Assembly: GCA_964252035.1 (NCBI GenBank)
Contig: OZ176207.1
From: Podarcis erhardii
Taxonomy: Eukaryota
Length of the DNA stretch: 64,000 bases
Strand: one strand, 5' to 3'
Of this stretch, positions 11,271 to 63,274 are shown piece after piece. The translations under genes and the position numbers were made by a program. Every line of letters begins with the position of its first letter. Position 1 is the first letter of the stretch. Under the pieces are notes generated by a model, which worked only from the letters and a program-made list of their open reading frames with translations, did no database searches and was not told the origin of the DNA.

Positions 11271-12228
11271 TGTGGGGTGCCACAGGGTTCTGTCTTGGGC
11301 CCGGTCTTATTCAACATCTTTATCAACGACTTGGATGATGGACTCAAGGGCATCCTGATCAAATTTGCAGATGACACCAAACTGGGAGGGGTGGCTAACA
11401 CCCCAGAGGACAGGATCACACTTCAAAATGACCTTGACAGATTAGAGAACTGGGCCAAAACAAACAAGATGAATTTTAACAGGGAGAAATGTAAAGTATT
11501 GCACTTGGGCAAAAAAAATGAGAGGCACAAATACAAGATGGGTGACACCTGGCTTGAGAGCAGTACATGTGAAAAGGATCTAGGAGTCTTGGTTGACCAC
11601 AAACTTGACATGAGCCAACAGTGTGACGCGGCAGCTAAAAAAGCCAATGCAATTCTGGGCTGCATCAATAGGAGTATAGCATCTAGATCAAGGGAAGTAA
11701 TAGTGCCACTGTATTCTGCTCTGGTCAGACCTCACCAGTTCTGGGCACCACAGTTCAAGAAGGACACTGACAAACTGGAACGTGTCCAGAGGAGGGCAAG
11801 CTAAATGGTCAAAGGCCTGGAAACGATGCCTTATGAGGAACGGCTAAGGGAGCTGGGCATGTTTAGCCTGGAGAAGAGGAGGTTAAGGGGTGATATGATA
11901 GCCATGTTCAAATATATAAAAGGATGTCACATAGAGGAGGGAGAAAGGTTGTTTTCTGCTGCTCCAGAGAAGCGGACACGGAGCAATGGATCCAAACTAC
12001 AAGAAAGAAGATTCCACCTAAACATTAGGAAGAACTTCCTGACAGTAAGAGCTGTTCGACAGTGGAATTTGCTGCCAAGGAGTGTGGTGGAGTCTCCTTC
12101 TTTGGAGGTCTTTAAGCAGAGGCTTGACAACCATATGTCAGGAGTGCTCTGATGGTGTTTCCTGCTTGGCAGGGGGTTGGACTCGATGGCCCTTGTGGTC
12201 TCTTCCAACTCTATGATTCTATGATTCT
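11271..12228 (+). mobile_element. 5'-truncated CR1 LINE (RT end of ORF2 plus 3' UTR)
   Basis: [18 protein letters not shown]...[10 protein letters not shown] reverse-transcriptase motifs. In-frame TAA at 11802-11804 and a missing LEYCV segment. Ends in the CR1 tail ctatgattctatgattct. Confidence 0.95.
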
Positions 12229-25544: not shown

Positions 25545-26108
25545 NNNNNNNNNNNNNNNNNNNNNNNNNNNNNNNNNNNNNNNNNNNNNNNNNNNNNNNN
25601 NNNNNNNNNNNNNNNNNNNNNNNNNNNNNNNNNNNNNNNNNNNNNNNNNNNNNNNNNNNNNNNNNNNNNNNNNNNNNNNNNNNNNNNNNNNNNNNNNNNN
25701 NNNNNNNNNNNNNNCTCACTCACACAGTCTTCAACCTTAGGTATTTTCATTTAATTCNNNNNNNNNNNNNNNNNNNNNNNNNNNNNNNNNNNNNNNNNNN
25801 NNNNNNNNNNNNNNNNNNNNNNNNNNNNNNNNNNNNNNNNNNNNNNNNNNNNNNNNNNNNNNNNNNNNNNNNNNNNNNNNNNNNNNNNNNNNNNNNNNNN
25901 NNNNNNNNNNNNNNNNNNNNNNNNNNNNNNNNNNNNNNNNNNNNNNNNNNNNNNNNNNNNNNNNNNNNNNNNNNNNNNNNNNNNNNNNNNNNNNNNNNNN
26001 NNNNNNNNNNNNNNNNNNNNNNNNNNNNNNNNNNNNNNNNNNNNNNNNNNNNNNNNNNNNNNNNNNNNNNNNNNNNNNNNNNNNNNNNNNNNNNNNNNNN
26101 NNNNNNNN
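25545..26108. other. Two assembly gaps (25545-25714 and 25758-26108)
   Basis: Runs of N. Confidence 0.99.
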
Positions 26109-29919: not shown

Positions 29920-30132
29920 AGCTTCCTTTTGGTTATTGCCATTTCCATGACTGCATTTTATTCTTACAACCTAATAGCCAAGAACCTCCTGTGTCCATGA
30001 TGAAGCATACTTTAAGGCAGATTTTAGATATAGGATGCCAATACAATTACTTTTTTTAATTTTTTTTTAAAAAACCACTGACTGGAACAAGACTGTTAGG
30101 AGACCAAGAAGCTTAATGATTATTTCCTTTAC

Positions 30133-30258
30133 CTTACAGGTCATCGTACGATGCTGAGCAATTACAGTTAGTTTCTCCAGAAGCCCTCTTAATCTCTCTT
30201 GTGTAGCATGGGAGATCAAGTTCAGAACATCTGAATTAACTTCCGTAATGTCATGGCT
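30133..30258 (-). CDS. TAF4B: TAF4B exon 11, visible part (SHDITEVNSDVLNLISHATQERLRGLLEKLTVIAQHRTMTCK), histone fold
   Basis: Histone-fold motif ISHATQERLRGLLEKL. Donor AAG|GTAAAG at 30132. The acceptor and about 5 nt are hidden in the N run 30259-30390. Confidence 0.93.
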
Positions 30259-30390
30259 NNNNNNNNNNNNNNNNNNNNNNNNNNNNNNNNNNNNNNNNNN
30301 NNNNNNNNNNNNNNNNNNNNNNNNNNNNNNNNNNNNNNNNNNNNNNNNNNNNNNNNNNNNNNNNNNNNNNNNNNNNNNNNNNNNNNNNNN
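30259..30390. other. Assembly gap covering the TAF4B exon 11 acceptor
   Basis: Run of 132 N directly abutting coding sequence. Confidence 0.99.
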
Positions 30391-54100: not shown

Positions 54101-56212
54101 ATTTTAAGATGTTACAATTCACAGACTTTAGACTTGAGGGGGGAAATTAAGGTGTCAAAAACTGTTAAATACTCATTTTAGCATGCTAGAATACCTGTAT
54201 GCATAAGTAATTGTGTTTTCTTGGGAACAGTCATAAGAAATTATGACTTTGGTTGCACATTTTACTAGCATTATTATTCATTCTAGCTGCCTAGCTCAGC
54301 ATGTATTTTTTTCATGCAGCCAATCCCATGAAACAATGAATTTCTAAAACTGAAAACATTATGTAGAAAAATATGGTAGCAATATTTTTCCCAGCAAATT
54401 CTCCCTATCACTGATGCCTTCGGTAATGCTCAGATGTTGTCAGTGAAGACACACTGCAGGTTGCCTTGATGTAACAAGTCATCCTTAACACAGCTAGCAG
54501 CATGGACAAACAGCAACAATTAATACTTGGATAATATGGTAAGGTACATTTTTCAACTTGTTACTTGCTCTGGGCCTGCAGCCACTCTGTCAGTCAATGG
54601 CACTCATGGCAAGTAATGTTTGTTGTGGCAAAGTTTGTGTGTGACCAACAATAGCTCTGCCACCACTATGCAGGAGTTTTTTCTGCCACTAGTGTTAAAA
54701 TGTATATGAAACAAATGAGGAGGAAATAAGCTGCAGCTGCTCTGGAGTCTACCAACCTGTGACCTTCCTTCAACAGATACATTGGCACAGATTCAAAATT
54801 AGGGCAGGAAAATCAGTGCATTGCCACGTTTCCTCAAAAAGACAAGCAGCACCATGAGGTATAGATAACTACCAACTCCAAGGTCACCCACACTCAGTTT
54901 GAACTGCAGGATCTCCTAGGATGATCACTCCCTTTCATGCATACCAAGGGAGCAATGAATAAGACTGAAACTTGTCAAGTTGCTCCTGATTTCATGACAT
55001 ATGTTGTTGGTGACAAGAAGAGCAATGTCTGAACAGGCCCCTGCAGTGGCACTCCTGCCAGGGGTGCTAATTAGATAACTATTTTCGTATTGTCACATTT
55101 GCTACACAGAAATTCTGCCATACCAAAGTCTAACAGCTAATATTTAAGTTTGTTCCAACTCCTAATATTCTCTCATTTTAACACCTGCCACCTGCACCTG
55201 TCAAGTAATGAAGAAGTCTGGGTAAATGAGAGTAATATCAATTTCTCAAAAAGGTAGAACTTTAATTAGAAAAATATGATACCAATTCAAAGCTGATGCT
55301 AGCGTCAAATCACATTTTAATAGCACAAGATATCAAAACTTCGACATTAAAAGTTTGGGTGTCAAAACATTTTGAAAAACTTTTGCAAGTATATTACATC
55401 TTTGCAAGCAGGCAGGGAGAAGAGAAGGAAACTAAGCCTACCTCAGGCAGGCAAAAAAGTTCATGTCAGTTTATTATATGTGGCACAAGCATAACTTAGA
55501 TGAGCAATTTAGCAACAGTTCAGTGGAATCATTTCACGCAAATATGCAGTTGTGTGAGTGCACTGGGAACTTTTAAGTCACTGATCTGCGATTAGCAAGT
55601 GAAACTTTAAAGGGCTTACAATACTAACTTTCTCCCTTTACTTCTATGATAGTCTATGTCACACTTCTAGAACATAAAAAAGTTCACTTAATATTGAGTC
55701 AGTGTTTCCATATAAAGACTTAATGCTGTGAACCATACAGTACAGATACTGTAGATGGGTTGCTGGAAACATTTTTTTTAAAGTCCTATCTGATTTTCCC
55801 AAGGAATCTGCATTGAATGCGGGGGGAGGGGGAGGGAGGCAGAGATACAGGCTGGCATTTTGGTGCCAACAACATTCAGTGGGCAGGTGCTGCGAAAGAT
55901 CGGAAGGGGTGATGAAGGCTACTCCATCCCCACAATAAACACCATTTAACTTGCTTAGGAGTTGTCCTCCGCCCCCGCCCCCCCCCCATAGCAGAAATTG
56001 AACCTGGGACCGTCTGCATGAGAATCAGTTCTTTGCCACGAAGCAATCGGCCCAGCTCTCATGTTTAGAAGGCACATCCCACCACGATGCCCACAACTCG
56101 CCACTAGGTCCCTGATGACTTGACCCGTTAGCTGAAAACAAAACAAAACTTGGCGGCGGCGCCTGGCCTCATCCTACAGGAGCGCTGCCAGGAAAGGGAG
56201 AAGGCAACTCAC

Positions 56213-56582
56213 CCGGCGGGATCTGGAAGTTGGCAGGTAGCTGTATCGTCACCGTCTGCGGGGCTTTGGGGGCTCCGGGCTGAGGGGCCGGCAGCCTGGT
56301 CCCCGCGCCGGGCGTCTGGGGGAGCTGCAGAGCCGGAGGCGCCCCTTTGGGAGCGGGCGCCGCTCGGGGCTGCTGGGCGACGGGAGGAGGGACTCTGCTG
56401 AGGGAAACTTCGGCGTTCAAGGCGGGCGGCGCCGCGCTGTGGGCGCGCAGCGCAGCCGGGGCCTCGCGGAGCCCCCCGGTCCCATTCAAGGCGGCGGCGG
56501 CGGGGCCGGCCGCCAAGGCAGCGAGCTCCGGAGACCCGGAGGGCAGGACCCTCCCCGGCGCGGCTGCTCCCGGCGTCGTCAT
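56213..56582 (-). CDS. TAF4B: TAF4B coding exon 1 (MTTPGAAAPG...TRLPAPQPGAPKAPQTVTIQLPANFQIPP-G)
   Basis: ATG at 56582-56580 inside the CpG island. The end matches the TAF4-family motif RLPAPQ...TIQLPANFQ.PPG. Donor G|GTGAGT at 56212, phase 1, 370 nt. The start-codon choice is inferred (weak Kozak, tccATGa). Confidence 0.85.
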
Positions 56583-56647
56583 GGAGGAGAGGGCGCGCGG
56601 CGGAAAGTGCGGGAGCCTGGCGGAGACTCCGAGCGAGTCCACAGCAT
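56579..56647 (-). other. TAF4B leader uORF2 (22 aa) whose TGA overlaps the main ATG (ATGA)
   Basis: ATG CTG TGG ACT ... CCT CCA TGA. The stop occupies 56581-56579, overlapping the main ATG at 56582-56580. Confidence 0.45.
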
Positions 56648-56780
56648 AGCAGCCTCCGAGGGGGCCCAGGAGCCGGCGAAGCTGCCGCCGCTGCGGCAAA
56701 AGCAGCGGCAGCGGCGGCGGCAGAGTCCCCAGCGAAACAAGCTGCCTCAGAGGCTGCACCGCTCGCGGACCAAGCAAGAG

Positions 56781-56807
56781 TTAGGGGCACGGCTGCAGAA
56801 AACACAT
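56781..56807 (-). other. TAF4B leader uORF1 (MCFLQPCP*)
   Basis: accATG TGT TTT CTG CAG CCG TGC CCC TAA, in frame with the main ORF. Lies in the leader only if the TSS is upstream of 56807. Confidence 0.45.
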
Positions 56808-57002
56808 GGTCCCGCAGCCGCTGCCGGCTTCTCCTCCTCAGAGGCGCGCACGTGTAGCGCCAGGCACTTCTCGCCTGGAGCAGAAGGCTCCAGCCAGGAC
56901 AGGGGCGCACGCGAGCCGGCAACGCCCTACGGAGCCCCGCGCCGCCTCCCAGACCCGCCCCGAGGAACAGCCCCCAAGCGGCTCCGCTCTCCGTTAGCCA
57001 TG

Positions 57003-57105
57003 TTTATATAGCCACGCGGGGCTCCCCGGCGCACGCGCCCTGGCTCTCCTGGCGGCTCATTGGCTACACCGGGCAACCTCGGCTGGGCGGCGTCGCGCGG
57101 CGTCA
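57003..57105 (-). promoter_or_regulatory. TATA box (TATATAAA, 57010-57003), CCAAT box (57063-57059) and CGTCA half-CRE (57101-57105)
   Basis: Motifs read directly. CCAAT then TATA are correctly ordered for a minus-strand TSS near 56975 (inferred). Confidence 0.55.
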
Positions 57106-58857
57106 CGCAGAGAGCACGGCCCCCCGCGCCGCTGAAGAACGCCGCAGGCGGAAAGTTATTGGGGAAATCGAATGCACTTGGTGGTTTTCGCTCTCTCTTA
57201 CACCCAAACACCCTCACTCACCGAAGGCGCACGTTGCATCGAAGAAGTAAGTGGAGTTGGTAATGCCAACAGAATGCCTATAATTTAGGGATTTCTACTT
57301 TTAAAATGTTTGCTTTGGGGTGGTGTTTTCTTTAAATTGATATTACTTGGGGAGTCAGCGCAGTGCACATCCGCAGGCACCCCTGCAGCCTTGTAAATAA
57401 GTTACTAGCATGCAAAGAGGAAGAAGCTTTTTACTAGTAATGGAGGAGTGAATAACACAGCAGCGTGCTGTTTTTCCGTAAAGAGTGCAGAGGAAGGAAA
57501 TGGAGCTCTAACCTTCCACCACCCACCTGCTCACTTTTCTGCATAAAATTTCCTGCACTGAGCTGCATGCACTTCCTTGTTAGTTACGGCTTCCAGGCTA
57601 GTGGTTCAATACAAGTCTACTGTGTTAGGGCTACTCTTAACAAAGTAGTTAGTGGTTTTCAATTTTTGTCATGAGGCTTACAAAATAAGCAGGGTGCATC
57701 CTTTTGAGGACAGGCAGGCTGTTCTGCTTTCTTACAGACATTTATAGATTAATGAAACGATCCTTAATTGTGCTCATTTTGCTTTTTAAAAAAACATAAG
57801 CATGGATGTGGTTTTGAGAGAGCGAAATGACTCTCAGGCAGTGCAATTTTATGCCACCTACTACTGAACTCTCTTGTGATGCCTGTGTTAATAATCACAC
57901 TGACATGTGATTTTTACAGGATTTTTACTTATTTATTTTGGTCAATAGCCATTCTTGTTGCTCCTCAACAAACTGCTGCTGGACCACTGAATATATTTTC
58001 AACTGCAGCTTTTTACACTTACCTAGGAGGGAGTCTTAGTTATCTCAGTGGGACTTACTTCCCCACAAATTATGCCCAAAGTATCTTACAGCATTTCACA
58101 TTTCAAAATAAAGCTTAGAAACATTTAGAAATAATGTTAATTTAGCAAATAAATACAAAAAATAAATCCATACAATGCTGCTTCTTCTTTGGCAATCACT
58201 CGTCGCCGAGTAAACTATATAAATATGGTAAGCTAGTTTAACAGTTTCAAATTAAACAGAAGAGAGAATAATGCCTAATTCAGAATAATCCCTAATAAGA
58301 AAGTAGATCACATGTTGCAGACAATGCACTTGTATCCAATAGTGTGGATCTGAGACTTCATCTTTAAACATCCAGAATCTCCACCCCATCTCTCACCTGG
58401 CTTTCACCCAGAGGGGCCTTATGCTCACCATTATTGTGGGCTCTTGCCCACAGTAAAGGAACCAATAACTTTCCTTCCACACTCCCCCATCAATAAAGGT
58501 ATGTTCTTCCAGTCTGGAAATCATAAACAAAGTTTCAGTGTTGTGATGAGCCCCAAAGTAGCGGACCTTTTAGCCTTCCTCAAGTTAAAAGATAAGGGTA
58601 ACAATGGAGAAACATGATTTAAAGGACAGGTTTTACAAAGAAAAATAAGCAGTTTCAACATTACTAGTTGAAACTCCCATTAAGCATTTTAGAACATTGC
58701 CAATTCTGTGTCTGTGGTTCATGCTGTTCATCATCTTATGCAGACCCAGTGTGTTAGTAATTTAATCCTTAAATATTTCCTACTACTATAATTGGTTAAC
58801 ACAATCTAGCATTTTTCTGCTTATCTGCAGCTGCCAGTTCCTAATCAACAAGTAGAA

Positions 58858-58875
58858 ATGGTGGCGTGGGCTTGA
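58858..58875 (+). other. Short strong-Kozak uORF (MVAWA*) upstream of the MCTS1 retrocopy
   Basis: gaaATGG TG GCG TGG GCT TGA, with G at -3 and G at +4. Ends 132 nt before the main ATG. Confidence 0.45.
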
Positions 58876-58901
58876 GAGTGGGAACAGGGCCTGCGTGGGA
58901 G

Positions 58902-58949
58902 TTGCTGCTGCTGCTGCTGCTGCTGCTGTTGCTGCTGCTGTTGCTGCTG
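58902..58949 (+). repeat. Interrupted CTG repeat: TTG(CTG)8 TTG(CTG)3 TTG(CTG)2
   Basis: Direct read; lies in the leader of the MCTS1 retrocopy. Confidence 0.95.
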
Positions 58950-59007
58950 TTAGTCGCTGGCCTTCCAGCCCCTCGGTTCTTAGGGCTCTCGCGGAAACCC
59001 CGGCAAG

Positions 59008-59553
59008 ATGTTCAAAAAATTTGATGGAAAGGAGAATGTGTCCAACTGCATCCAACTAAAAACGTCAGTTATTAAAGGCATTAAGAACCAGCTGATAGAC
59101 CAGTTTCCTGGGATCGAACCATGGCTAAACCAAATTATGCCAAAGAAAGACCCTGTGAAGATAGTACGTTGTCATGAACATATAGAAATCCTCACAGTAA
59201 ATGGAGAATTGTTGTTCTTCAGGCAAAGGGAAGGACCATTTTATCCCACGCTCAGGTTACTTCATAAATATCCATTCATTCTACCACATCAACAAGTTGA
59301 TAAAGGAGCCATTAAATTTGTACTTAGTGGAGCAAATATCATGTGCCCTGGTCTGACGTCTCCAGGAGCTAAACTTTATCCTGCTGCTGCTGATACAATC
59401 ATGGCAATAATGGCCGAAGGAAAGCAACATGCCCTGTGTGTTGGAGTCATGAAGATGTCGACAGGGGATATTGAGAAGGTCAACAAAGGAATTGGCATTG
59501 AGAATATCCACTATTTAAATGATGGTCTCTGGCATATGAAGACATATAAGTGA
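59008..59553 (+). CDS. MCTS1: Intronless MCTS1 retrocopy with intact ORF (malignant T-cell-amplified sequence 1, PUA-domain translation reinitiation/40S recycling factor), 181 aa
   Basis: [29 protein letters not shown]...[24 protein letters not shown]...[18 protein letters not shown] is full-length MCTS1, with no introns, stops or frameshifts. Good Kozak (aagATG). Vertebrate MCTS1 is multi-exon, so this is a retroposed copy. Confidence 0.95.
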
Positions 59554-59990
59554 AGAAGCAGGAAGAATCCATTGGATTTCAGCTGGGCCTGTTTTTAATT
59601 CTTCTTTTAAAATGTGTGGCTAAATGTAAACTTTGTGGTGATGCTAAATAAATCAAATGAATGCTGAGGGAAAAACAAGTAGAAATGGCATGTAAATAAA
59701 AGTTTGCTTCATCAAACAACTTTAGTAATTCTTCAAAAGAATTGCTGTTATTGTGTTCAGATGATATGCTGTTTAATTTATATTCTCCTGCTGAATTGAA
59801 ATTCAGTATATTGTTTTCCATCTGTCTGAAGTGCTCAAGACTGGTGAATTCCCTTTCAACAATATGAGTCCCTTGGTCTGAGCTACTCAGGAAAAGCAAT
59901 TACAATATAATTGTAGGTGTTTCCCCCCCCCCCGCCCTCTTCGCTTGTGCAGTGCACCTAAATTCTTTTTAATGAGAAAAAAACAAAACA
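59554..59990 (+). other. Probable 3' UTR of the MCTS1 retrocopy with AATAAA at 59647 and 59695 and an A-rich remnant at ~59976-59990
   Basis: The two hexamers are read directly. The A-rich tract gaaaaaaacaaaaca could be a decayed poly(A) tail (inference). Confidence 0.45.
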
Positions 59991-60664: not shown

Positions 60665-61150
60665 GGTGCCTGCACTGATAACCTCAGAGCTTGATTACCA
60701 TAATGTTCTTTGTGTGGGGCTACCCATGTATTTCAGAGGGACGCGGGTGGCGCTGTGGGTTAAACCACAGAGCCTAGGGCTTGCTGATCAGAAGGTTGGT
60801 GGTTCGAATCCCCATGATGGGGTGAGCTCCCTTTGCTCAGTCACAGCTCCTGCCAACCTAGCAGTTCGAAAGCACGTCAAAGTGTAAGTAGATAAATAGG
60901 TACCACTCCGGTGGGAAGGTAAACGGCATTTCCGTGCACTGCTCTGGTTTGCCAGAAGCAGCGTAGTCATGCTGGCCACATGACCCAGAAGCTGTACGCT
61001 GGCTCCCTTGGCCAATAAAGCGAGATGAGCACCACAACCCCAGAGTCGGTCACGACTGGACCTAACAGTCCGGGTCCCTTTACCTACCCGTGTATTTCAA
61101 CCAGAAGCTTTAACTAGAGTGGAATGCAGCAGCCAGTCTGCTTACGGGAG
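60665..61150 (+). mobile_element. L2-type LINE fragment split by a Sauria SINE
   Basis: ALITSELDYHNVLCVGLP before the SINE; the ...gaatgcagcagccagtctgct (NAAA.LL) continuation follows it. Confidence 0.6.
60736..61084 (+). mobile_element. Sauria-type SINE inserted in an L2 fragment
   Basis: TSD tacccatgtatttca (60721-60735) / tacccgtgtatttca (61085-61099), one mismatch. Confidence 0.93.
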
Positions 61151-62639: not shown

Positions 62640-63274
62640 TGATTCCTAACTGGTCCCAAGACAGGAGCAAGCTAGCAGTAAATCACACCAAGAAAGTTGG
62701 AGTTAACTCTTTATTAGCAAAAACAGGATCTACACAGGAGTGTCAGACCTAATGAGCATAGCAACTCATTTCTGGCAGGACTTGCCCCCATGAAGCAGTT
62801 GCAGAGACTGCAAGTTCCCGCCTCCCCGCAGCTGCCTAAGTCCCCTCCTCTCCAGGGTTTTCCCCAAGCAATCTGACACAGCAACTGTGTGTAGCTAACA
62901 TCTCCTCCACCCTTTTCATGACTCTCCTGGTTCTGAGAGACATGGGGGGGGGCAGAAGAGGAACTTGTTGCAGCAGGAGGGGGAGACACTCATGCCTCTT
63001 CAACAGTTGGACTCTGCCTCTTGACCTCCCTCCTCTCCTGCTTCAGCTTCTGCCTCTGCTTCTGGCCTCCTCTCTGCCACAGGCTCCCCCAGCTCACTAA
63101 GCCCTGTTACCCCTTCAGCTTCTGACACCTCCTCCTCCCAGGCTTCTTCCTCTTCTCTCTCTGACCACCGATTGTCATCCCAGCACCAATCCCCGGACTC
63201 TGAACCTTCTTCCTTTTGGGGGTTCCCCAGCTGGTTCCTCCCACCATTCCTCTTTTTCCAACCAGTCCATGATA
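62640..63274 (-). mobile_element. Probable solo LTR (Gypsy-like)
   Basis: The minus strand starts TATCATGGACTGG (TG-like start mutated), has a purine-rich U3, then ctAATAAAgagttaact, and ends near ...atCA. No clear TSD; boundaries approximate. Confidence 0.6.

What the first reader, a model, noticed from the sequence alone, without database searches (positions are those of the whole stretch)
57172..59007. Predicted spliced leader connecting the TAF4B CpG island to the MCTS1 retrocopy
Seen on the plus strand: a consensus donor GAA|GTAAGT at 57246/57247, right at the island edge. Also an acceptor tttttctgcttatctgCAG| at 58830, with a TTAAC branch-point-like motif at 58796-58800, just before the GC-rich retrocopy leader. 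This defines a 1584-nt intron. An ATG at 57172 stays in frame across the junction and ends at the uORF stop at 58875 (39 codons). Inference: divergent transcription from the TAF4B promoter is spliced onto the retrocopy, a known way for retrogenes to recruit a promoter. Caveat: an extra AG lies at 58808-58809, and such motifs occur by chance.
Basis: partly seen in the sequence, partly recalled or inferred. Interest (0 to 1): 0.7.

Follow-up and report, generated by a model that had tools for sequence, protein, structure and literature searches.

The report
Predicted intron upstream of MCTS1 retrocopy
A wall-lizard genome holds a cleanly reverse-transcribed copy of the MCTS1 gene 1.9 kb from the TAF4B-like promoter, and the splice signals that could join the two are real and of normal strength, but no RNA evidence could be obtained, so the spliced leader stays an untested hypothesis of an ordinary, known kind.

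Summary

New here: a perfect 15-nt target-site duplication (58847-61 and 59674-88) bounds the retrocopy at 58862-59673. The acceptor therefore lies in host DNA, 31 nt before the insertion. Snake MCTS1 has six coding exons, so the intronless 181-aa ORF is a true retrocopy.

On a simple weight matrix, both proposed sites score within the range of real squamate splice sites. Each is the best candidate in its zone. Sites this good also occur 0.6-0.75 times per kb per strand by chance.

A stronger acceptor (57737) and five poly(A) signals lie in between. The copy looks young and carries four replacements at otherwise invariant residues, so its open frame proves nothing.

No run is on record as RNA.

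Verdict: observation confirmed, interpretation untestable here (about 20% likely). The mechanism is already known from mammals. The scan noted this retrocopy on this window only, not on other DNA.

The parts
56000..57250 (.). CpG island of the TAF4-family (TAF4B-like) gene
   Evidence: GC 0.55-0.79 and CpG observed/expected 0.6-1.17 in 200-nt bins. Over 56200-57200, GC is 0.72 and observed/expected is 0.92.
56213..56582 (-). Coding part of exon 1 of the TAF4-family gene: ATG at 56582, followed by donor CGG|GTGAGT
   Evidence: ORF and donor located. A downstream exon at 30070-30258 (minus) hits Pfam TAF4 PF05236 at E 2.8e-14. Exon 1 itself has no Pfam hit and no word-search hit.
57003..57010 (-). 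TATA-like box (TATATAAA read on the minus strand). Together with a CCAAT at 57059-57063 (minus), it places the TAF4B-like TSS near 56975-56985.
   Evidence: Read directly. The TSS position is an inference from the usual spacing of these elements and is not mapped.
57172..57246 (+). 3' part of the proposed non-coding exon 1, with an upstream ATG at 57172
   Evidence: The 5' end (TSS) is unknown.
57247..57252 (+). Proposed donor, GTAAGT after GAA
   Evidence: It scores 3.99 bits on the matrix, against real snake MCTS1 donors at -2.3 to 5.95. It is the only plus-strand GT scoring above 0 in 56950-57500.
57247..58830 (+). Proposed 1584-nt intron
   Evidence: Arithmetic checked. No repeats are shared with the rest of the window, and there are five plus-strand poly(A) hexamers at 58107, 58148, 58161, 58251 and 58492. 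Rfam gave no credible hit.
57716..57737 (+). Rival acceptor, nearer to the donor and stronger: a pyrimidine tract followed by CAG|
   Evidence: It scores 6.97 bits, against 5.92 for the proposed acceptor.
58107..58166 (+). Cluster of three AATAAA hexamers, able to end an unspliced or 57737-spliced divergent transcript before the retrocopy
58796..58830 (+). Proposed 3' splice region: TTAAC branch-point-like motif, an AG at 58808-9, a pyrimidine tract, and CAG| ending at 58830
   Evidence: It scores 5.92-5.93 bits, against real snake acceptors at -0.25 to 10.2. One of the five real snake introns also has an AG within 25 nt upstream.
58847..58861 (+). 5' copy of the target-site duplication (15 nt)
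   Evidence: It is a perfect 15/15 match with 59674-59688 (family D5).
58858..58875 (+). Five-codon upstream ORF straddling the insertion junction: the ATG is in host DNA and the stop is in the retrocopy
   Evidence: Read.
58862..59673 (+). Body of the processed MCTS1 retrocopy: leader 58862-59007, ORF, and 3' UTR, ending in only 3-5 A
   Evidence: It is bounded by the duplication. The leader has GC 0.64 and CpG observed/expected 0.48, against 0.09 in the host DNA just upstream. Its similarity to the snake 5' UTR is weak.
59008..59553 (+). Intact 181-codon MCTS1-type ORF without introns
   Evidence: Pre-PUA PF17832 at E 7.9e-28 and PUA PF01472 at E 4e-15. The C-terminal piece is 96% identical to MCTS1. 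The snake parent-type gene has 6 coding exons spread over 8-12 kb.
59647..59652 (+). The retrocopy's own AATAAA, 18 nt before its 3' end. A second AATAAA, in host DNA, lies at 59695-59700.
59674..59688 (+). 3' copy of the target-site duplication
   Evidence: family D5.

Best explanation
Shown: a LINE-type, target-primed processed retrocopy of MCTS1 (58862-59673, bounded by a perfect 15-nt target-site duplication) landed in AT-rich intergenic DNA. It lies 1.9 kb upstream of, and head-to-head with, the TATA/CCAAT CpG-island promoter of a TAF4-family (TAF4B-like) gene in a Podarcis genome. The donor at 57247 and the acceptor at 58830 are genuine motif matches of ordinary strength, both in host DNA. 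Inferred, and my best reading: they are not a selected, dominant intron feeding the retrocopy. The copy is young and probably silent or only weakly transcribed. Any divergent RNA from the island that uses the lone donor most likely splices to the nearer, stronger acceptor at 57737, or ends at the AATAAA cluster at 58107-58166. The 57246-58831 junction would then be absent or a minor isoform.
For: Retrocopy anatomy is well supported: the duplication, Pre-PUA and PUA domains, and a six-exon parent-type gene in snakes. Sites as good as the proposed ones occur 0.6-0.75 times per kb per strand by chance. The rival acceptor at 57737 scores 6.97 against 5.92. Five poly(A) hexamers lie in the proposed intron. 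An AG lies 21 nt upstream of the acceptor. Four replacements (E7G, V132M, A152T, E153G) fall at positions that are the same in the lizard, snake and turtle MCTS1 proteins compared, which suggests relaxed constraint. With substitutions alone, the ORF stays open in 77% of trials at 1% divergence and 60% at 2%, so intactness is no evidence of use. No run is on record as RNA, and the 'RNA?' runs hold only 12-19% of the sampled words, which the parent mRNA alone could explain.
Against: The donor is the only plausible 5' splice site in the 500 nt after the island. The acceptor is the best one in the 300 nt before the ATG. Both score like real squamate sites. Head-to-head placement next to a CpG island is a documented route to retrocopy expression: 11% of expressed retrocopies in mouse and human, per Carelli 2016 as summarised in PMC5470649. 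The leader keeps 7 CpGs (observed/expected 0.48), which could mean youth or germline hypomethylation. No read data were seen, so absence of the junction is not shown.
Confidence: 0.5

Rival explanations
1. Divergent transcription from the TAF4B-like CpG island starts at about 57050-57200 on the plus strand and is spliced from 57246 to 58831. This skips the poly(A) signals and delivers a roughly 100-200-nt non-coding exon onto the retrocopy, whose own AATAAA at 59647 ends the mRNA.
For: All motifs are present at the stated places. The donor and acceptor scores lie within the range of real sites, and each is the best in its natural zone. The acceptor lies 31 nt before the insertion, in host DNA. 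Head-to-head promoter sharing and recruited 5' exons are documented for mammalian retrogenes (PMC5470649). Because the intervening DNA carries five poly(A) hexamers, splicing is the only way the island could drive the copy.
Against: There is no transcript evidence of any kind. The competing acceptor at 57737 is stronger and nearer. An AG lies at -21/-22, and the first exon base is C, which is not the consensus. The copy shows replacements at invariant residues. Motif pairs of this quality are common by chance.
Confidence: 0.2
2. The retrocopy is transcribed from a proximal, newly arisen or carried-over promoter at about 58.7-58.9 kb (in the GC-rich parental leader or just upstream), giving an unspliced mRNA independent of the TAF4B-like island.
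For: Most expressed mammalian retrocopies (86%) use newly evolved promoters close to the insertion, and about 3% carry parental ones (PMC5470649). The leader at 58862-59007 is GC 0.64 with CpG observed/expected 0.48, in contrast to 0.09 just upstream. A TATAAT-like string lies at 58787-58792.
Against: The leader is only 146 nt long and is not a CpG island by the usual length criteria. The host DNA upstream is AT-rich and CpG-poor. No TSS data were obtained.
Confidence: 0.2
3. The retrocopy landed in a pre-existing short terminal exon of a spliced divergent non-coding RNA of the TAF4B-like promoter. In that case the acceptor predates the insertion, and the copy is expressed as a passenger.
For: With the retrocopy removed, the host sequence reads acceptor (58830), then 31 nt, then 12 nt further on an AATAAA (59695-59700). 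That is a possible terminal exon of about 70-90 nt.
Against: Such a short terminal exon is unusual, and the arrangement can be chance. No empty-site orthologue or RNA data could be fetched.
Confidence: 0.1

Closest known systems
Mammalian retrogenes that use the bidirectional CpG promoter of an upstream head-to-head gene and recruit new 5' untranslated exons (Carelli et al. 2016, as summarised in Casola and Betran 2017, PMC5470649)
   Same: Head-to-head orientation within about 2 kb of a CpG island. A candidate 5' UTR intron bridges the island to the retrocopy. The splice sites lie in host DNA.
   Different: Those cases rest on transcript data, and this one has none. The host is a lizard rather than a mammal. 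The copy looks young and shows no sign of constraint.
MCTS2, the mammalian retrogene of X-linked MCTS1, nested in an H13 intron and imprinted (PMC1796624, PMC3107425, PMC11790910)
   Same: The same parent family (Pre-PUA + PUA, 181 aa). It is an intronless copy with an intact ORF. The parent probably lies on a sex chromosome: the lacertid Z is homologous to parts of chicken 4p and human X (PMC6534595), and the snake parent lies next to a cullin gene, which fits the human Xq24 arrangement as I recall it.
   Different: This is an independent insertion at another locus (upstream of a TAF4-family gene, not inside H13). MCTS2 has its own intragenic CpG-island promoter and is expressed and active in re-initiation. 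None of this is shown for the lizard copy.
Upstream antisense (divergent) promoter transcripts governed by the balance of U1 sites and poly(A) signals (established knowledge, not tested here)
   Same: A CpG-island promoter, with one U1-type site about 270 nt from the inferred sense TSS and poly(A) hexamers 0.9-1.2 kb further on.
   Different: Whether this island is transcribed divergently at all is unknown. The sense promoter has a TATA box, a class that tends to be more directional.

Membership tests
Processed (LINE-mediated) retrocopy | Lacks the introns of a multi-exon parent gene | tested here: met
   Snake MCTS1 (P0122) has 6 coding exons over 8-12 kb in four genomes. The window ORF at 59008-59553 is continuous.
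Processed (LINE-mediated) retrocopy | Flanking target-site duplication | tested here: met
   A perfect 15-nt direct repeat at 58847-61 and 59674-88. By my own estimate (about 1.3 million position pairs against 4^15 possible 15-mers), about 0.001 such exact repeats are expected by chance anywhere in the 1.6 kb searched.
Processed (LINE-mediated) retrocopy | Poly(A) tail at the 3' end, after the parental poly(A) signal | tested here: inconclusive
   An AATAAA lies 18 nt before the end, but only 3-5 A remain before the duplication.
MCTS1/MCTS2 protein family | Pre-PUA plus PUA domains in a protein of about 181 aa | tested here: met
   PF17832 at E 7.9e-28 and PF01472 at E 4e-15. The C-terminal piece is 93-96% identical to vertebrate MCTS1.
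Retrogene driven by a shared bidirectional promoter through a 5' UTR intron | Head-to-head with a CpG-island gene within a few kb | tested here: met
   The island is at 56000-57250, exon 1 is on the minus strand, and the retrocopy is on the plus strand at 58862.
Retrogene driven by a shared bidirectional promoter through a 5' UTR intron | Usable donor and acceptor in the right order | tested here: met
   This holds at motif level only: 3.99 and 5.93 bits, within the range of real snake sites.
Retrogene driven by a shared bidirectional promoter through a 5' UTR intron | Transcripts that start in the island on the retrocopy's strand and carry the junction | not testable with these tools
No run is on record as RNA. 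The gene ranges in the look-up of encoding contigs cover the CDS only.
Retrogene driven by a shared bidirectional promoter through a 5' UTR intron | Purifying selection on the retrocopy ORF | not tested
   The Podarcis parent's coding DNA could not be fetched. Four replacements at otherwise invariant residues hint at relaxed constraint.
TAF4B (as opposed to TAF4) | TAF4-family domain, and closer to TAF4B than to TAF4 | tested here: inconclusive
   The TAF4 domain is present. The same piece is only about 56% identical to human TAF4, which fits the paralogue. The name TAF4B rests on my memory of the human sequence, and no tool named it (one search found nothing).

The most novel reading that the evidence does not exclude
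The copy is a working lizard retrogene that left the lacertid Z chromosome and captured the promoter of the germline TFIID subunit TAF4B through a new 5' UTR intron. It would then supply MCTS1 activity in germ cells, an independent replay of mammalian MCTS2. Its leader would carry a five-codon upstream ORF created by the insertion itself, in the mRNA of a factor that promotes re-initiation after such ORFs.
Probability: 0.08. Interest if true: 0.55.

Novelty: new member of a known kind. Interest (0 to 1): 0.22.

Why it matters
If the junction were real, this would be a non-mammalian example of a retrocopy gaining expression from a neighbour's bidirectional promoter through a new 5' UTR intron. 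It would also be a possible parallel to mammalian MCTS2 arising from a sex-linked parent. How promoters are recruited outside mammals is listed as an open question in the retrocopy review PMC5470649. As it stands, this is a well-formed but ordinary prediction. The solid result is the precise anatomy of a young MCTS1 retrocopy.

Tried and rejected
I did not call it again.

The protein was searched as the piece 59212-59550. Rfam was run only up to 59172. Local scripts masked or skipped those places. For the same reason I did not look up the full retrocopy protein in the look-up of encoding contigs or the listing of cluster members. That was the only route to RNA contigs of the copy.

3. The word search returns representatives of 90% clusters, so the retrocopy's own protein and its orthologues stay hidden inside MCTS1 clusters. 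Listing ten clusters showed no Podarcis entry except the partial P0014.

4. The TAF4B exon-1 ORF gave no hit in the word search, so no lacertid contigs could be fetched for conservation or an empty site.

5. The TAF4B route to an annotated locus was dropped.

6. Rfam gave only a sub-threshold chance match on the CTG repeat. A self-BLAST of the proposed intron found no repeats.

8. Cluster members identical to human proteins (P0001, P0121) were not looked up, and no human contig was fetched.

9. MaxEntScan tables are not available offline.

Full report
**Observation**

- ATG at 57172.
- GAA|GTAAGT with the exon ending at 57246.
- A pyrimidine tract ending in CAG at 58830.
- TTAAC at 58796-58800.
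- An extra AG at 58808-58809.
- A 1584-nt interval.
- A joined frame of 39 codons closing at TGA 58873-58875.

The donor sits exactly where the CpG island fades. CpG observed/expected drops from 1.07 to 0.59 between the 57100 and 57200 bins.

**What is there**

The plus-strand ORF at 59008-59553 encodes a 181-aa protein with Pre-PUA and PUA domains. Its C-terminal 113 residues are 93-96% identical to vertebrate MCTS1.

A perfect 15-nt direct repeat lies at 58847-58861 and 59674-59688. It brackets an 812-nt body at 58862-59673, made of:
- a GC-rich leader of 146 nt;
- the ORF;
- a 3' UTR with AATAAA 18 nt before the end.

Only 3-5 A remain of a tail.

Colubroid snake MCTS1 (P0122) has six coding exons spread over 8-12 kb in four genomes and lies next to a cullin gene. 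The window copy lacks all five introns and is a true processed retrocopy.

The proposed acceptor therefore lies in host DNA. The exon it would open begins 31 nt before the insertion.

Earlier notes of the scan say the genome is a wall lizard (Podarcis). A Sauria-type tRNA SINE at about 60740-61090 fits a squamate (recognised from memory).

**The neighbour**

On the minus strand an exon-1 ORF starts at ATG 56582 and ends at a CGG|GTGAGT donor. A downstream exon carries the Pfam TAF4 domain. It is only about 56% identical to human TAF4. That fits the paralogue TAF4B, but that name rests on my memory of the human protein, not on a tool result. The word search on exon 1 found nothing.

A TATATAAA at 57003-57010 and a CCAAT at 57059-57063, both read on the minus strand, suggest a sense TSS near 56975-56985. 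This is an inference. The donor would then lie about 270 nt away on the other strand, a natural distance for a divergent transcript.

**Strength of the signals and chance**

| Site | Score (bits) | Sites in 128 kb scoring at least as high | Rate per kb per strand |
|---|---|---|---|
| Donor 57247 | 3.99 | 96 GT | 0.75 |
| Acceptor 58830 | 5.92 | 77 AG | 0.60 |

Exact GTAAGT occurs 23 times in the same 128 kb.

I calibrated the matrix on real squamate sites, the five introns of snake MCTS1 in four species:
- Real donors score 4.18, 5.95, 4.28, -2.29 and 2.79.
- Real acceptors score from -0.25 to 10.2.

Both proposed sites are therefore of normal working strength.

57247 is the only plus-strand GT above 0 bits in 56950-57500. 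58830 is the best acceptor in 58700-59010, ahead of 58743 (4.02) and 58983 (4.08). One of the five real snake introns also has AGs within 25 nt of its acceptor, so the extra AG at 58808 weakens the site but does not disqualify it.

Roughly 0.2 donors and 0.1 acceptors of this quality are expected by chance in the two natural zones.

**Features against the specific junction**

- A nearer and stronger acceptor lies at 57737 (6.97 bits).
- Five poly(A) hexamers lie on the plus strand inside the proposed intron, three of them clustered at 58107-58166.
- A divergent RNA using the lone donor could therefore just as well form a two-exon non-coding RNA ending near 58.2 kb.
- An unspliced RNA would be expected to end there too. 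The island can reach the retrocopy only by the long splice.

**Is the copy likely to be in use?**

For a protein this conserved, that suggests relaxed constraint or a new role.

The perfect duplication points to a young insertion. In simulation, substitutions alone leave the frame open with the following probabilities:

| Divergence | Probability the frame stays open |
|---|---|
| 1% | 0.77 |
| 2% | 0.60 |
| 5% | 0.30 |

The intact ORF is therefore not evidence of function.

The leader keeps 7 CpGs (observed/expected 0.48), against 0.09 in the host DNA upstream. That may reflect youth or an unmethylated state.

**The decisive test could not be run**

The look-up of sequencing runs listed no run on record as RNA. 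Eighteen runs guessed to be RNA hold 12-19% of the sampled words of 57100-59700. That amount could come from the parent mRNA if copy and parent differ by 1.5-3%. DNA runs hold 50-83%.

I worked beside them with pieces 59008-59172 and 59212-59550, ran Rfam only up to 59172, and masked them in scripts. I also did not look up the full retrocopy protein. That closed the only route to RNA contigs of the copy.

Other limits:
The junction was translated locally only, to check the arithmetic.
- No human contig was fetched.
- The gene ranges in the look-up of encoding contigs from start codon to stop codon (3001 is the ATG in L001-L004), so an annotated locus would not have shown a UTR exon either.

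**Comparison with what is known**

The proposed mechanism is well documented in mammals. About 11% of expressed retrocopies use the bidirectional promoter of a head-to-head neighbour, 86% use newly evolved promoters, and about 3% use inherited ones. Between 28% and 52% of retrogenes recruit extra exons (Carelli et al. 2016, as summarised in PMC5470649).

The nearest relative by gene family is mammalian MCTS2, a retrogene of X-linked MCTS1 with its own CpG-island promoter inside H13 (PMC1796624, PMC3107425, PMC11790910).

The lacertid Z chromosome is homologous to parts of chicken 4p and human X (PMC6534595). Snake MCTS1 sits beside a cullin gene, which fits the human Xq24 arrangement as I recall it. 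A Z-linked parent is therefore plausible but was not tested here.

**Verdict**

The spliced leader is a reasonable but unverified prediction. My estimates:

| Reading | Probability |
|---|---|
| The 57246/58831 junction is a real, substantial isoform | about 0.2 |
| A proximal promoter drives the copy | about 0.2 |
| The copy is a passenger in an older non-coding exon | about 0.1 |
| The copy is silent, or the island's divergent RNA stops short | about 0.5 |

If true, it would be a new member of a known kind. Interest is low to moderate.

Noticed in passing
window 58858-58875: The insertion itself created a five-codon upstream ORF: the ATG lies in the host-derived duplication and the stop in the retrocopy's first bases. 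It sits in the leader of a copy of MCTS1, a factor known to promote re-initiation after short upstream ORFs (PMC11790910). It is relevant only if transcription starts upstream of 58858.
   Followed up: no
window 59669-59700: The retrocopy ends with only 3-5 A before the duplication, although the duplication is perfect. Either the tail was very short at insertion or it shrank. A host AATAAA follows at 59695-59700, so with the copy removed the host reads acceptor, then about 45 nt, then AATAAA.
   Followed up: partly
window 58901-58950: An imperfect (CTG)n tract of about 50 nt lies in the retrocopy leader (family D1). It gave the only Rfam 'match', a chance sub-threshold hit. Whether the parent 5' UTR carries the same repeat is unknown. 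The alignment to snake 5' UTRs is weak.
   Followed up: partly
window 60740-61090: A tRNA-derived SINE of the Sauria type lies downstream of the retrocopy (recognised from memory).
   Followed up: no
window 11277-12152: Two adjacent plus-strand ORFs (175 and 115 aa) look like the reverse-transcriptase and C-terminal part of a CR1/L2-type LINE inside a TAF4B-like intron (recognised by eye, not scanned).
   Followed up: no
window 25545-26108 and 30259-30390: Runs of N lie inside the TAF4B-like gene, one of them cutting the exon that carries the TAF4 domain.
   Followed up: no
window 62800-63250: A strongly pyrimidine-rich plus strand (GC skew down to -0.39, AT skew down to -0.32) with CT-rich low-complexity sequence. 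Its nature is unknown.
   Followed up: no
L001-L004 (snake MCTS1 loci): In four colubroid genomes MCTS1 lies between a cullin gene (921 aa) and a single-exon 316-aa gene on the opposite strand. This fits my memory of the human Xq24 neighbourhood (CUL4B, MCTS1, C1GALT1C1). The first coding exon holds only 11 nt and ends GAA|GTGAGT.
   Followed up: partly
window 59135 region versus P0014: The partial Podarcis muralis MCTS1 entry P0014 has V at residue 135, where the retrocopy and all other vertebrates compared have M. Either the parent changed after the copy was made, or the database model is imperfect.
   Followed up: no
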